DNA of 63,186 nucleotides, filler included, from Octopus bimaculoides (Eukaryota), in the NCBI RefSeq assembly GCF_001194135.2. It is 5 parts of 4 records of this genome, joined end to end, with 100 filler letters (N's around TTAATTAATTAA, not from the genome) between each part and the next. Parts side by side here need not be neighbours in the genome. Positions count along the whole stretch, not along the records: positions 20,542 to 31,881 come from NC_068996.1; 4 more parts are not named here. One strand, written 5' to 3'. This document shows positions 22,670-31,881 of the stretch, in pieces (the stretch's first letter is position 1; each line of letters opens with the position of its first letter). The position numbers and the translations under genes were made by a program. Under the pieces are notes generated by a model that ran no database searches, was not told the origin of the DNA, and saw only the letters and a program-made list of their open reading frames with translations.

Positions 22670-22761
22670 NNNNNNNNNNNNNNNNNNNNNNNNNNNNNNN
22701 NNNNNNNNNNNNNNNNNNNNNNNNNNNNNNNNNNNNNNNNNNNNNNNNNNNNNNNNNNNNG

Positions 22762-22838: not shown

Positions 22839-23755
22839 TATCAGATCATTCCATAAATAATGCAGTTTTTCCAATTCCATGAATTAAAGTTGGACAGGGA
22901 TGGGGTAAACTACCTGCATCAACTTGCTATAAAAGCAGGTAGAAATTTTACCTTAGACTTCTTCTTAGTGCAAATTTTGAAGAGTGCAGTTTGATTTTAA
23001 CAGTTATTTTTTCAATGCTATAATAGAAGTGACAAAGGAGTATATTTAGCATATTTTGCTTTATGAGTTCAATAAAGACAACAACACAATGAAAAATGTG
23101 AGGAAGATTGATACAGTATATATGGATTGGACAATAAGCATAAGCCAGTGTCAATAGTGGTTCCAGAAATTCCAAGCTGGAAACTACAGCTTAGAAGATG
23201 AGCCTTGTCCTGGAAGAGCTGTAGAGTGCAACGAGGACATCCTGTAAATCCTGGTGGAACAAAATGCCATCATAAGTGTTGAGAATCTACTTGAGAAGCT
23301 TGGATTTGGTTATTCAACCAATCATTCAAATCAGCACTAGAAGGAAAATGACCATCTTTGGTTTCAAGACAAAAGGTGTTCTTCCATCAGGATAATGCTT
23401 AGCCACATACAGTAAGGATGACATTCCAAAGTCTGGAAAAGTTTGAATGGGAAATGATGCTCCACCCACAATATTCGCCGCACATTTCCTCATCTGATTA
23501 TCATTTATTCTGCAGTCTTCAAAACAATTTGGACGGAAAAAATATGAATTCTGTAAATGAGGTCAGAACAGTATTGGAGGAGTATTTTTAGTCACAGACA
23601 AGTGAGTTTTGGAAGAGCGGCCTTGCACGTCTACCAGATAGATGGAAGAGCATTGTAGAAAATGAAGGAGAGTATATTTTAGATTAAAAAAACAACTTTG
23701 TTTATCTTAATTTTGAAAAACAAATGAACCACATTATTTATAGGATGACCCAATA
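22839..23755 (+). mobile_element. mariner (DD34D) remnant with internal deletion
   Basis: AGNYSLEDEP.PGR, VFFHQDNA and HPQYSP..SSDYHLF motifs. Imperfect TIRs TCAGATCATTCCATAAATAATG / CATTATTTATAGGATGACCCAATA. Confidence 0.85.
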
Positions 23756-24464
23756 TCATCATCATCATCGTTTGGGAAGCAAACATCTTACCATACAGCT
23801 ATAAACACAGCCACACCTGCACACACACACACACACACACATATATACATTGTGTGTGTGGGTATACATATGTGTATATGTATATATATATATATATGTG
23901 TATGTATATGTATGTTATGTAGACATATATAATATGTAATATATGCATATGTATATACATATATATATGTGTGTTTTTATATAAAATTATATGTATATAT
24001 CCTCATAGACACGCATACAAACATACATAAGTACATATATATATTAATATACATACAAACATACTCCTATGCACAGACACACACAAACATGTCCACAATG
24101 TTAGTTAGCTTTGGATGTTTGGAAATAACAATGTTCTGTAGCTTTGACGACAGTGAATATTCCTGCTGACCAATCAACAATATTCATTCTATTTTGATAT
24201 AAAAGACTTTGTATAACACAGTCAGGTATAACTAGTAATCTAATCCTTGAGAAGAATTGGATAAAAAAAAAAAANNNNNNNNNNATAAATTTGTTATAAA
24301 GTCCGGCTTTCTTTCTGTGTTTTGCTGTTGCGCTTGTTATTGTTCGGCAGTATTTGTTATTTAATTACTTTATTTTTTTCTTATATATTTGCTTTAAAAC
24401 ATATTTGTTATACGTCACACTTCATGTATACGTTATCATCTTGTAATACCTTGTGATATCATTT

Positions 24465-25636
24465 TTAGTACGCCCACGGTCGCCACACATTTTCTTCACT
24501 TATGTGTTGCATAACAAGAGGCTCCAGAGCGACTGGATTGTTGTTATTATTATTATTATTATTATTAGTAGCAGTAGTGGTAGTAGTATTAGTAGTAGTA
24601 GTAGTAATATTATTGTTATTATTGTTATTGTTATCCAAATTGTATATCGGGTGTTCACTTAATGATGGAAATGTCGTTACTTTGGATGAAGGAAATGGTG
24701 GGGACATTTTTGAAGGCAACGATATTGAACTGATGTTCGGTTCACTACAGATCTGTAAATGATCCGAAAGAGATGGAACAACTGTGGTTGTGGTAATCTG
24801 AGGGTTTGTTGCATTTGATAAAACTTGGGAAATATTGGACGTATTCTGAATTGGCGTTACTGCACAGGTTTTCAAACCACTGGTAGCTACTTGTGGTAAA
24901 AAGGCCATCACGCTTGGAGTTGAAGAGACTGTTGTCGTCAACGGACTTACTGCTGGAGGTGTCGAGGCATATATTGGAATGATATAGCTTGGTTGCTGGG
25001 TTTGTGTTCCAGCCATTACATTTGCTGGAAAGACAAGAGCGACCTCTCCGGACGGTAGTTTTGTAGGAATGAGCTGGACTCCGCTAACGAACTTGGCTGT
25101 TTGCAATGGTGAGTTTGAAGTAAACGACAAACTCCCGTTCAGTGTGTTTGATATTGTTGTAGTGTTGGTGCTAGACGTACATGTACCTATTGATGTTGTT
25201 GTCGTTGTTGATGACGCTGCTGCTAGGGATGCTACAGGTGTTGTTGTACAGGCTTCTGTTGTTAGTACAATGGGCTTTGATGGAGGCGTTGGTACTGATG
25301 GTGCAGCTGCTGCTACTGTCAAAACAACGGGAGATGAAGACTGAGCTTTGGGTATTGAGATCTGTGGTGTTGAGGCACTTTTGGGAGATAATGTCGGAAT
25401 ATTTGGTGAAAGACATGAAGAACTTTCAGATACTGAAGATGAAGAGCTTATAGAACTGTTTGGTGTTGACGATGATCCATAGTTTGTCATATAACAGGCT
25501 AAATGATTGAGAAGGCGAGCTCTGACTTCTATGTTGACTTCATCAACTGAATTTAGGTAGCGGCTTACTTCTGTTGCACATTCATTGAATCCAAGGCGAT
25601 ATTTATTTATAATCGTAGGATCTTCATTAGCAGAAA
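24465..25636 (-). CDS. hairy: hairy/HES bHLH-Orange repressor, last coding exon (Orange, HC domain, WRPW)
   Basis: Acceptor TTTTTCAG at 25637. Orange domain KYRLGFNECATEVSRYL...RARLLNHL; hairy/deadpan-type GVQLIPTKLPSGEVALVFP; ends VWRPWAY-TAA. Confidence 0.95.
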
Positions 25637-25869
25637 CTGAAAAATAAATATAAAAGGAGATAAGATAAAATGTTGCTTTGGTAATTAGAGCATAAAACAC
25701 AGCTGGTGGCATCAACAATATAGAAAATGGTATAATGGTAAATATTTTATAGTTAGAGTGTATTGGGACATTTCTATTCTATGATTATTTTTGGTTATAA
25801 ATTACATACACAGAATTGGAATCTGATGTTAAAAGATTCTTTAGGAAGCCAAATGAGACCCTGTCTTAC

Positions 25870-27389: not shown

Positions 27390-27477
27390 CTGAAAAGTGT
27401 TGTCGCTGTAATTGCCGCACATGTTTCACTGTCATTTCAAGAATATCTGCTTTTTCCATTTTACTGTGTCTAGCTCC
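27390..27477 (-). CDS. hairy: hairy/HES loop-helix 2 exon
   Basis: TTTTGTAG acceptor, G|GTATGC donor, 88 nt, phase 0 to 1. Reads GARHSKMEKADILEMTVKHVRQLQRQHFS and joins both neighbours in frame. Confidence 0.95.
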
Positions 27478-28619: not shown

Positions 28620-29640
28620 GAGCCTTCATCAGAGCTGGTGCTCTGAAAAATGGTGTGAAGTAGTTGGCGTTAGGAAGGGCATCAAACTGTAGAAACCATG
28701 CCAAAGCAAAAATTGGAGCTCTCTGCCTTCTCAGTTCATATCAAACCACCCCACCCATGACAGTATAGGAAATGGAGTGTTAAATGATGATGATGAAAAT
28801 CGTGTGTGTGAGTGCCGCTGAACTGGCTCCTGTGCAGGTGGCACATAAAATACACCATTTTGAGCGTGGCCGTTGCCAGTACCACCTGACTGGCCTTCAT
28901 GCCAGTGGCACGTAAAAAGCACCCACTACACACTCGGAGTGGTTGGCATTAGAAGGGCATCCAGCTGTAGAAACTCTNNNNNNNNNNCTACACACTCGGA
29001 GTGGTTGGCATTAGAAGGGCATCCAGCTGTAGAAACTCTACCAGATCAGATTGGAGCCTGGTGTAGCCATCTGGTTTTACCAGTCCTCAGTCAAATCGTC
29101 CAACCCATGCTAGCATGGAAAGCGGATGTTAAACGACAATGATGATGATGATGACATGTATACTTTACTTATATATATAGATATTCTGCTATAAGGTACA
29201 CAGGAGAAGATGCTGGACATCACTTTTGTAAACAGGGAGAGTGACTACATTTGTAGGGGAGTAGGATTGCCTTTGAGAAGCAGACATGACCACATGGTCA
29301 TATGAAAGACATACTTTCCTGCCCTTTGTAGGAAAGGGTTCATGTATTCCATATATTTACCAGCACGTTTCAACACGGGGTATGCATGGGATACATCTTA
29401 ATCAGTTGCCTGACCATGTTGTACAAGACATTTTTCCTGAGTCTCAACATAGCTTTTGGTGAAATCAAGGTACAGCTGACATGATCTTTATCATCATCAT
29501 CATCGTTTAACGTCCGCTTTCCATGCTAGCATGGGTTGGACGATTTGACTGAGGACTGGTGAAACCGGATGGCAACACCAGGCTCCAGTCTGATTTGGCA
29601 GAGTTTCTACAGCTGGATGCCCTTCCTAACGCCAACCACT

Positions 29641-29687
<47 letters not shown>

Positions 29688-30044: not shown

Positions 30045-30140
30045 CTCTTTTTTCATAACTTCTAATAGAAGAGCTTTCAATTCAGCTAAACTTGCATTCA
30101 TTCTCGCTCTTCTTCGCTTTTCCATGATTGGCTTGGAGCT
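30045..30140 (-). CDS. hairy: hairy/HES basic-helix 1 exon
   Basis: TTTTCACAG acceptor, GAG|GTAAAT donor, 96 nt, phase 0 to 0. Reads [32 protein letters not shown], with the HES-diagnostic proline in the basic region. Confidence 0.95.
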
Positions 30141-30211: not shown

Positions 30212-30825
30212 TATAATGATAATAATAATAATGATAATGATAATGATGGTGTTTATGATTTCTTCTAGATAGTTATATATTTCNNNNNNNNNNNNNNNNN
30301 NNNNNNNNNNNNNNNNNNNNNNNNNNNNNNNNNNNNNNNNNNNNNNNNNNNNNNNNNNNNNNNNNNNNNNNNNNNNNNNNNNNNNNNNNNNNNNNNNNNN
30401 NNNNNNNNNNNNNNNNNNNNNNNNNNNNNNNNNNNNNNNNNNNNNNNNNNNNNNNNNNNNNNNNNNNNNNNNNNNNNNNNNNNNNNNNNNNNNNNNNNNN
30501 NNNNNNNNNNNNNNNNNNNNNNNNNNNNNNNNNNNNNNNNNNNNNNNNNNNNNNNNNNNNNNNNNNNNNNNNNNNNNNNNNNNNNNNNNNNNNNNNNNNN
30601 NNNNNNNNNNNNNNNNNNNNNNNNNNNNNNNNNNNNNNNNNNNNNNNNNNNNNNNNNNNNNNNNNNNNNNNNNNNNNNNNNNNNNNNNNNNNNNNNNNNN
30701 NNNNNNNNNNNNNNNNNNNNNNNNNNNNNNNNNNNNNNNNNNNNNNNNNNNNNNNNNNNNNNNNNNNNNNNNNNNNNNNNNNNNNNNNNNNNNNNNNNNN
30801 NNNNNNNNNNNNNNNNNNNNNNNNN

Positions 30826-31565: not shown

Positions 31566-31597
<32 letters not shown>
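30826..31597 (+). mobile_element. R4/Dong-like non-LTR retrotransposon 3' ends (restriction-like endonuclease), two stacked copies with (TAA)n tails
   Basis: TDQTIKADKPDIVVKD...LLIDMS...KLRKYKDL..EIEK...IPVIVG (PD-D/ExK REL motif). The 3' UTR before the TAA run at 31558 resembles 30860-30973. Confidence 0.8.
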
Positions 31598-31881
31598 CAT
31601 CATCATCATCATCATCGTTTAACGTCCGCTTTCCATGCTAGCATGGGTTGGACGATTTGACTGAGGACTGGTGAAACCGGATGGCAACACCAGGCTCCAG
31701 TCTGATTTGGCAGAGTTTCTACAGCTGGATGCCCTTCCTAACGCCAACCACTCAGAGAGTGTAGTGGGTGCTTTTACGTGTCACCCGCACGAAAACGGCC
31801 ACGCTCGAAATGGTGTCTTTTATGTGCCACCCGCACAAGAGCCAGTCCAGGGGCACTGGCAACGATCTCGCTCGAAAACCC
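31598..31881. repeat. Young (CAT)n-tailed repeat copy truncated by a gap
   Basis: First about 150 bp match 29490-29641 with no visible mismatch. Confidence 0.85.

What the first reader, a model, noticed from the sequence alone, without database searches (positions are those of the whole stretch)
24465..24485. HES protein ends WRPWAY: two residues added after the Groucho-binding WRPW
The codons read TGG CGA CCG TGG GCG TAC TAA. Hairy/E(spl) proteins canonically end exactly at WRPW, which docks in the Groucho/TLE WD40 pore. HEY proteins with an extended YRPW bind Groucho poorly, whereas some internal WRPW-like motifs (Ripply, Huckebein) do work. An otherwise canonical hairy-class factor with an extension may have altered co-repressor affinity and so tuned Notch output.
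Basis: partly seen in the sequence, partly recalled or inferred. Interest (0 to 1): 0.7.

Follow-up and report, generated by a model that had tools for sequence, protein, structure and literature searches.

The report
Octopus HES repressor ending WRPW-AY
The last exon of an octopus HES1/hairy-type Notch-pathway repressor gene really does encode two extra residues (Ala-Tyr) after the Groucho-binding WRPW motif, but such short tails recur across the HES family (human HES1 itself ends WRPW-RN), so this is an ordinary lineage-specific variant.

Summary
On the minus strand, 24485..24465 reads TGG CGA CCG TGG GCG TAC TAA (WRPWAY-stop). It closes the last exon of the Octopus bimaculoides HES1/hairy-like bHLH-Orange gene, already annotated as XP_014772623.1 'protein deadpan' and A0A0L8HFY6.

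It is not an assembly slip. An independent O. vulgaris genome reads WRPWAH-stop at the same place. The cuttlefish (Sepia esculenta) relative and nearly all other molluscan homologues stop straight after WRPW, so the tail is derived on the octopus side.

Of 129 motif-bearing family representatives, 17 (13%) carry residues after the motif. Mammalian HES1 ends WRPWRN and a mammalian HES-4 ends WRPWLR. HES1 is the textbook TLE-dependent repressor.

HEY fails to bind TLE because of its first Tyr, not its tail: a Y-to-W Hey1 binds TLE1. The last octopus residue differs between species (Y/H), and the 3'UTR is as conserved as the coding sequence, so nothing indicates selection on the tail.

The most likely reading is a near-neutral two-residue tail with Groucho recruitment retained. 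Binding was not tested. Interest is low.

The parts
24474..24485 (-). WRPW codons (TGG CGA CCG TGG), the Groucho/TLE-binding tetrapeptide
24468..24473 (-). Two extra codons GCG TAC (Ala-Tyr) after WRPW. O. vulgaris has GCA CAC (Ala-His). They are absent in Sepia esculenta and in a second cuttlefish/squid-like transcript, where TGG is followed directly by TAA.
24465..24467 (-). TAA stop codon, at the same position in O. vulgaris
24465..25636 (-). Exon 4, the terminal coding exon. It holds the Orange domain, a long S/T/N-rich linker containing the conserved block GVQLIPTKLPSGEVALVFPANV...PSYIIPIYA, then WRPWAY-stop. The acceptor is tttatttttcag|TT.
25488..25604 (-). Hairy Orange domain (PF07527, E=1e-14), residues KYRLGFNEC...LLNHLA
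   Evidence: coordinates derived
27390..27477 (-). Exon 3: GARHSKMEKADILEMTVKHVRQLQRQHFS (loop and helix 2 of the bHLH). Acceptor ttttgtag|, donor |gtatgc, phase 1.
30045..30140 (-). Exon 2: [32 protein letters not shown] (basic region with the HES-specific Pro, and helix 1). Acceptor ttttcacag|, donor |gtaaat.
24541..24636 (-). AAT/ACT trinucleotide-repeat tract inside exon 4 that encodes the poly-Asn/poly-Thr run just upstream of the C-terminal peptide. It differs by substitutions and one indel between O. bimaculoides and O. vulgaris.

Best explanation
The 21 bases are the last six codons plus the stop of the terminal exon of the Octopus bimaculoides HES1/hairy/deadpan-like bHLH-Orange repressor gene. 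The gene has four coding exons, and exon 1 lies 58-71 kb upstream, outside this piece. The protein has every HES hallmark and ends WRPW-Ala-Tyr.

The two-residue tail is real and arose on the octopus side after the split from cuttlefish and squid. Six extra bases sit between the last Trp codon and a TAA (octopus TGG GCG TAC TAA A..; Sepia TGG TAA A..). It is one more instance of a recurrent, short post-WRPW tail in this family.

Inferred mechanism: the protein binds N-/E-box DNA as a dimer through its bHLH-Orange region. It recruits Groucho/TLE through WRPW docking on the WD40 propeller. The Ala-Tyr/His tail simply projects from the complex with little or no functional consequence, as the Arg-Asn tail does in mammalian HES1.

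Shown here: sequence, gene structure, domains, conservation pattern, and frequency of tails. Inferred, not shown: Groucho binding and neutrality of the tail.
For: Sequence and splice structure.

Identity: 100% match to A0A0L8HFY6 / XP_014772623.1. Pfam HLH (E=1.3e-12) and Hairy_orange (E=1e-14).

O. vulgaris genome...EENVWRPWAH-stop at the homologous site. The Ala codon differs synonymously (GCG/GCA) and the last codon non-synonymously (TAC/CAC).

Sepia esculenta transcripts (10 contigs shown, from 24 read; runs SRR23936175 and SRR25097172 are named as S. esculenta in PMC10571815 and PMC10442824) and a second related transcript read TGG TAA. The Sepia protein is colinear with the octopus protein from Met1 to WRPW.

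Frequency of tails: 107 of the 120 best homologues end at WRPW and about 6 are extended. Of 150 representatives at 50% identity, 129 have the motif; 112 are terminal and 17 are extended. Named examples are HES-4 WRPWLR, lungfish WRPWYK, Owenia WRPWSR, crinoid WRPWY and tunicates WRPWS+6-10, plus abalone WRPWH and WRPWSHI.

Human HES1 = ...SMWRPWRN by exact look-up; 14 of the 15 listed members of its mammalian cluster end WRPWRN and one ends WRPWRS. Hes1 represses with Gro/TLE1 in a WRPW-dependent manner (PMC2779591). A HES1 WRPW-motif peptide is presented by TLE1 (PMC13308096).

A Y-to-W Hey1 gains TLE1 binding (PMC1950541). Ripply1 uses a WRPW near its N-terminus (PMC1955682).

Exon 4 of O. 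bimaculoides versus O. vulgaris: 322 identical codons, 50 synonymous and 18 non-synonymous differences. The terminal residue is one of the 18. The first ~180 nt of the 3'UTR are ~92% identical.
Against: No binding or repression data exist for any octopus HES protein.

The TLE1 co-crystal (2CE9) used SMWRPW without the native RN (PMC13043292). So the structural effect of residues after the last Trp is not documented in anything I could read.

The tail length, the stop position and the Ala are shared by two Octopus species. That is compatible with weak constraint as well as with recent common ancestry.

Only two octopus species and two decapodiform transcripts could be compared. The species of one of those transcripts (SRR27666084) is unknown.

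Orthology of the Sepia gene is inferred from colinearity, not from a phylogeny.
Confidence: 0.8

Rival explanations
1. One reading: the Ala-Tyr tail changes how well WRPW docks on the Groucho/TLE WD40 domain. By burying the otherwise free C-terminus or adding an aromatic contact, it would tune repression strength and Notch output in octopus.
For: Most HES proteins do stop at WRPW: 87% of motif-bearing representatives and 107 of the 120 best homologues. That suggests some preference for a terminal motif. The tail length, the stop and the Ala are shared by O. bimaculoides and O. vulgaris. WRPW-versus-WRPY differences at the last motif position have strong in-vivo effects in Runx proteins (PMC13043292), so this interface is sensitive.
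Against: Mammalian HES1 (WRPWRN) and a mammalian HES-4 (WRPWLR) carry tails of the same length, and HES1 is a fully TLE-dependent repressor. A Y-to-W Hey1 binds TLE1. An N-terminal WRPW in Ripply1 works. The terminal residue varies, Y versus H, within the genus. The neighbouring 3'UTR is as conserved as the tail.
Confidence: 0.12
2. The terminal Tyr, or recoding of the last codons, provides a regulatory switch. Options are phosphorylation of the C-terminal Tyr (by analogy with the terminal Tyr of Runx WRPY) or cephalopod A-to-I RNA editing of TAC or TAA that changes or lengthens the tail.
For: Phosphorylation of the terminal Tyr of Runx WRPY controls the TLE-dependent function (PMC13043292 abstract and text). 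Coleoid cephalopods edit many neural transcripts (general knowledge, not tested here). The final codons TAC TAA contain editable adenosines.
Against: O. vulgaris has His, not Tyr, at this position, so a Tyr switch is not conserved. No editing or phosphorylation data were available. The Tyr here lies outside the WRPW core, unlike in Runx.
Confidence: 0.04
3. Artefact: the two extra codons come from an assembly or base-calling error, or from a wrong gene model, and the true protein ends at WRPW.
For: The window is a draft assembly with gaps. One 10-N gap at 24275-24284 lies ~180 nt downstream of the stop. The later O. bimaculoides assembly belongs to the same accession series, so it is not independent.
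Against: The independent O. vulgaris chromosome assembly has the same six-base insertion relative to Sepia and the same stop, with two substitutions inside it. No indel or N lies within 180 nt of the site. The reading needs no splicing decision, because the tail is contiguous with 390 codons of open exon.
Confidence: 0.02

Closest known systems
Mammalian HES1 (human NP_005515.1, 280 aa, ends ...SMWRPWRN)
   Same: It is a bHLH with Pro in the basic region, an Orange domain, and the conserved block before the C-terminus (GGFQVVP...FAFLIP...VIPVYT versus GVQLIPTKLPSGEVALVFP...YIIPIYA). Its WRPW is followed by exactly two residues and a stop. HES1 and hairy-related proteins are the top named vertebrate homologues. 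It recruits Gro/TLE through WRPW.
   Different: The tail is Arg-Asn rather than Ala-Tyr/His, and it arose independently: fish, amphibian, reptile and bird HES1/her6 end at WRPW. The octopus protein is 466 aa, with a much longer Ser/Thr/Asn-rich linker.
Cuttlefish relative (Sepia esculenta transcripts, P0123/P0002, 415-417 aa) and a related decapodiform-like transcript (P0008)
   Same: It is colinear from MHSEK... through the bHLH, the Orange domain and the PTK(L/M)P...VA(L/F)V block to ...E(E/D)ENVWRPW. Identity is 39% over the full length.
   Different: It ends exactly at WRPW. The DNA reads TGG TAA ATT CAG TAA, against octopus TGG GCG TAC TAA AAA TGA.
Other HES proteins with short post-WRPW tails: HES-4 (Pipistrellus, WRPWLR), Protopterus HES-4-B-like (WRPWYK), Owenia (WRPWSR), Antedon (WRPWY), Haliotis (WRPWH, WRPWSHI), Lytechinus (WRPWSHRRE), tunicates (WRPWS+6-10)
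   Same: They have the same family and architecture and the same kind of tail: 17 of 129 motif-bearing representatives.
   Different: The residues and lineages differ, and each tail apparently arose independently. None of these tails has a documented function that I could find.
Drosophila Hairy / Deadpan / E(spl) (the RefSeq name of this gene is 'protein deadpan')
   Same: They share the bHLH-Orange-WRPW architecture and Groucho recruitment (PMC1950541).
   Different: The Drosophila proteins are described as ending in the tetrapeptide itself (literature). I did not re-examine their sequences.
HEY proteins (YRPW/YXXW followed by TE(I/V)GAF)
   Same: They are bHLH-Orange proteins with a related tetrapeptide that is not at the very end.
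   Different: HEY has Gly, not Pro, in the basic region and Tyr, not Trp, at motif position 1. That Tyr is the reason it cannot bind TLE. The octopus protein has Pro and a full WRPW, so it is not a HEY.
Ripply1 (non-bHLH, WRPW near the N-terminus)
   Same: It has a functional Groucho-binding WRPW that is not C-terminal (PMC1955682).
   Different: It is an unrelated protein with no DNA-binding domain.

Membership tests
HES (Hairy/Enhancer-of-split) bHLH-Orange repressors | bHLH domain with the invariant proline in the basic region | tested here: met
   Pfam HLH E=1.3e-12. The basic region reads [15 protein letters not shown] with the Pro. The criterion is stated in PMC1950541.
HES (Hairy/Enhancer-of-split) bHLH-Orange repressors | Orange domain (helix 3/4) after the bHLH | tested here: met
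   Pfam Hairy_orange PF07527, E=1e-14, 54.9 bits against a cut-off of 25.3, covering profile positions 1-39 of 40.
HES (Hairy/Enhancer-of-split) bHLH-Orange repressors | WRPW tetrapeptide at the carboxy-terminal end | tested here: met
   WRPW is present intact, followed by two residues. In this respect it matches mammalian HES1 and 13% of family representatives.
HES (Hairy/Enhancer-of-split) bHLH-Orange repressors | Conserved intron pattern: two introns inside the bHLH coding sequence and one between bHLH and Orange (Gazave et al. 2014) | tested here: met
   The introns lie before SSKPIMEK, after ...VMKKE, and after ...QRQHFS (phase 1), all with AG/GT boundaries. The pattern is described in PMC4172395. 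I did not verify position-by-position homology by alignment to the Platynereis genes.
HES (Hairy/Enhancer-of-split) bHLH-Orange repressors | Physical recruitment of Groucho/TLE through the motif | not testable with these tools
   This needs peptide-WD40 binding or reporter assays. It is inferred only by analogy with HES1.
HES (Hairy/Enhancer-of-split) bHLH-Orange repressors | Notch responsiveness (Su(H)/CSL sites in the promoter) | not tested
   Exon 1 and the promoter lie 58-71 kb upstream, outside the piece. Not all HES genes are Notch targets.
HEY (Hairy/E(spl)-related with YRPW) | Gly instead of Pro in the basic region; YRPW/YXXW followed by TE(I/V)GAF | tested here: not met
   The basic region has Pro. 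The motif is WRPW. The tail is AY, not ...TE(I/V)GAF. Criteria are from PMC1950541.

The most novel reading that the evidence does not exclude
The octopod-specific A[Y/H] tail measurably weakens or regulates WRPW-Groucho docking, or Groucho-dependent turnover of the repressor by an SCF-FBXL14-type pathway. That would change the half-life or strength of this HES factor and so the tempo of Notch-dependent neurogenesis in octopuses relative to squid and cuttlefish.
Probability: 0.06. Interest if true: 0.4.

Novelty: already known. Interest (0 to 1): 0.1.

Why it matters
It matters little. The gene and its WRPWAY end are already in RefSeq and UniProt, and the best-studied HES protein (mammalian HES1) has a tail of the same length. 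The useful outcomes are three corrections:
- 'HES proteins end exactly at WRPW' holds for roughly seven of every eight family clusters, not for all.
- HEY's failure to bind TLE is due to its first Tyr, not its extension.
- The O. vulgaris gene model for this locus is truncated.

If the tail did change Groucho binding, it would be a small lineage-specific tuning of a conserved repressor. That would interest cephalopod developmental biologists and few others.

Tried and rejected
- A homologue search with only the post-Orange C-terminal 176 aa (poly-N/T removed) returned nothing, not even the self-hit. The cause is probably composition or word-index limits, and one capped search was lost.
- An exon-4-only search found no additional octopod sequences, so the tail could not be dated within Octopodiformes.
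- The look-up of encoding contigs found no record of the exact UniProt model P0001. The RefSeq model P0122 and the O. vulgaris model P0121 did give loci.
- A full-text search for 'WRPWRN' found no paper. I confirmed the HES1 terminus by exact-sequence look-up instead.
- Fisher et al. 1996 (PMC231257) and Jennings et al. 2006 are not held. A search for 'WRPW' with 'carboxylate' gave nothing relevant. So I could not read what the TLE1-WRPW structure says about the free C-terminus.
- A stop-loss origin for the tail does not fit simply. In Sepia the next in-frame stop is three codons after the first, which would give a 3-residue tail, so a six-base insertion is the simpler reading. The event cannot be reconstructed from four sequences.
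- The mariner-like ORF at 23418-23591 gave no Pfam hit (one search failed on stop codons).

Full report
OBSERVATION. The + strand at 24465-24485 reads tta gta cgc cca cgg tcg cca. On the minus strand this is TGG CGA CCG TGG GCG TAC TAA, which translates to W-R-P-W-A-Y-stop. They close a 417-codon open frame (24465..25718). The real exon within it starts at 25636, after a canonical polypyrimidine/AG acceptor.

WHAT THE GENE IS. Six-frame translation of the piece found two upstream coding exons on the same strand.
- Exon 2, 30140..30045: [32 protein letters not shown].
- Exon 3, 27477..27390: GARHSKMEKADILEMTVKHVRQLQRQHFS.

Both have AG/GT boundaries and join in frame to exon 4. The 451-residue product hits Pfam HLH (E=1.3e-12) and Hairy_orange (E=1e-14). 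It is 100% identical to Octopus bimaculoides A0A0L8HFY6 and to RefSeq XP_014772623.1 'protein deadpan', 466 aa.

The first coding exon (MHSEKLSSTTGEGRK) lies about 71 kb upstream in the chromosome-level O. bimaculoides assembly and about 58 kb upstream in O. vulgaris. It is therefore outside this piece.

The basic-region proline, the Orange domain, WRPW and the intron pattern (two introns in the bHLH, one between bHLH and Orange; PMC4172395) all match the HES family and not HEY (PMC1950541). The best named homologues are molluscan, annelid, nemertean and vertebrate HES-1/HES-4/her6/her9 proteins.

IS THE TAIL REAL? I fetched the locus from the newer O. bimaculoides assembly (L002) and from the independent O. 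vulgaris assembly GCA_951406725.2 (L001).
- L002 is identical over 1416 nt.
- L001 is 93.4% identical and reads ...EENVWRPWAH-stop: TGG CGA CCT TGG GCA CAC TAA.

Two species therefore share a two-codon tail and the same TAA. The substitutions inside the tail show that these are separate sequences, not copies of one error. Reads and cDNA could not be examined.

WHERE DID IT COME FROM? Two Logan-derived protein clusters align to the octopus protein over its full length and end ...EDENVWRPW.

The contigs of one cluster come from runs that include SRR23936175 and SRR25097172. Two papers name these as Sepia esculenta larval transcriptomes (PMC10571815, PMC10442824). The species of the other run (SRR27666084) is unknown.

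Their DNA reads TGG TAA ATT CAG TAA and TGG TAA ATA CAA TAA. The octopus reads TGG GCG TAC TAA AAA TGA. The simplest description is six extra bases in the octopus lineage in front of a TAA.

The Sepia protein is colinear with the octopus protein from Met1 to WRPW, with 39% identity. Outside the conserved domains its alignment spans 105 aa, against 40-50 aa for non-cephalopods. This fits orthology, though I built no tree.

Nearly all other molluscan and lophotrochozoan homologues end at WRPW. The terminal motif is therefore ancestral and the tail derived.

HOW UNUSUAL IS A TAIL?
- Among the 120 best homologues, 107 end exactly at WRPW. Six carry short extensions: WRPWH, WRPWSHI, WRPWSHRRE, WRPWSMA, WRPW+10 and FRPWDK.
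- In the diversity-balanced search (one representative per 50%-identity cluster, 150 best), 129 have a recognisable motif. Of these, 112 end at it and 17 (13%) continue.

Named cases:

| Source | C-terminus |
|---|---|
| Bat HES-4 | WRPWLR |
| Lungfish HES-4-B-like | WRPWYK |
| Annelid Owenia | WRPWSR |
| Crinoid Antedon | WRPWY |
| Dimorphilus | WRPWQKNIM |
| Slug Arion | FRPWKE |
| Three tunicates | WRPWS plus 6-10 residues |

From memory I expected human HES1 to end WRPWRN. An exact-sequence look-up of the recalled 280-aa sequence returned NP_005515.1 / HES1_HUMAN. Of the 15 listed members of its mammalian cluster, 14 end WRPWRN and one ends WRPWRS. 'HES proteins end exactly at WRPW' is thus a majority pattern, and the best-studied member breaks it by exactly two residues.

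DOES A TAIL MATTER FOR GROUCHO?
- Hes1 represses with Gro/TLE1 in a WRPW-dependent way (PMC2779591).
- A HES1 WRPW-motif peptide is presented by the TLE1 WD40 domain to SCF-FBXL14 (PMC13308096).
- Fischer and Gessler (PMC1950541) state that HEY proteins cannot bind TLE because the first motif residue, Tyr, fits the hydrophobic pocket poorly. They also state that a Tyr-to-Trp exchange in Hey1 allows TLE1 binding. As I read it, that mutant keeps the TE(I/V)GAF residues after the motif, so a longer tail is tolerated.
- Ripply1 uses a WRPW near its N-terminus (PMC1955682).

One caveat applies. The TLE1 co-crystal 2CE9 used SMWRPW without the native RN (PMC13043292). I could not read Jennings et al. 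2006 or Fisher et al. 1996. A modest quantitative effect of post-motif residues is therefore not excluded.

IS THE TAIL UNDER SELECTION? Across exon 4 the two Octopus species have 322 identical codons, 50 synonymous differences, 18 non-synonymous differences and one indel, so the protein as a whole is constrained. The final residue (Y/H) is one of the 18 replacements, and the Ala differs only synonymously. The first ~180 nt of the 3'UTR are ~92% identical, about the same as the coding sequence. The shared stop position therefore follows from recent common ancestry and needs no selective explanation.

CONCLUSION. It is not supported as to rarity or likely functional impact. The best explanation (confidence about 0.8) is an ordinary, probably near-neutral, octopus-lineage two-residue tail on a canonical HES repressor that still recruits Groucho through WRPW. 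The rivals are an affinity-tuning tail (0.12), a Tyr or RNA-editing switch (0.04) and an artefact (0.02). The gene and its terminus are already in public annotation, so novelty is 'already known' and interest is low.

Noticed in passing
L001 10001-73310 (O. vulgaris OX597829.1) versus protein P0121 (CAI9734413.1): The deposited O. vulgaris gene model is only 111 aa and ends ...NECATEYLKVLHVFHQIF. It leaves exon 4 early. The genome nonetheless encodes the complete exon 4 (L001 72136-73310), 95% identical to O. bimaculoides and ending WRPWAH. The model looks mis-spliced or truncated.
   Followed up: partly
window 30140 upstream; L002 10001-10051 and L001 10001-10051: The first intron of this HES gene is very long: about 71 kb in O. 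bimaculoides and about 58 kb in O. vulgaris. Exon 1 (MHSEKLSSTTGEGRK) is conserved in both. The UniProt model A0A0L8HFY6 lacks it and starts at the internal Met of MEKRRR.
   Followed up: partly
window 29481-29642, 31593-31754 (direct, 98%), 29014-29154 (inverted, 92-94%); also 28811-28874 / 31794-31857: A dispersed repeat of ~140-160 nt occurs in at least three copies, in both orientations, within and upstream of the introns. It looks like a SINE-type interspersed element and was not classified.
   Followed up: no
window 23418-23591 (+): A short ORF (…HPQYSPHISSSDYHLFCSLQNNL…) about 0.9 kb downstream of the gene resembles, by eye, the C-terminal part of mariner/Tc1-type transposases. Pfam gave no hit for the 57-aa fragment, so this is unconfirmed.
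   Followed up: partly
window 24541-24636 (-), inside exon 4: A trinucleotide repeat (AAT/ACT) encodes a poly-Asn/poly-Thr run of ~35 residues just before the conserved C-terminal peptide PVALEPLVMQHISEENVWRPW. It differs between the two Octopus species and is absent from Sepia.
   Followed up: partly
proteins P0050, P0091/P0149, P0092, P0093, P0166, P0225, P0244, P0257: Among HES proteins with post-WRPW tails, Ser is strikingly frequent as the first extra residue. Examples are WRPWSH in an abalone, a sea urchin and Styela; WRPWSK/SE in other tunicates; WRPWSR in Owenia; and WRPWSMA in a mayfly. Within tunicates the longer tail appears conserved. This is unexplained.
   Followed up: no
window 22670-22760, 24275-24284, 28978-28987, 30284-30825: These are assembly gaps (runs of N) in the piece. 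The 542-N gap sits ~145 nt upstream of exon 2, and the 10-N gap ~180 nt downstream of the stop. Neither touches coding sequence. Extensive TA/CA microsatellites lie at 23800-24060.
   Followed up: yes
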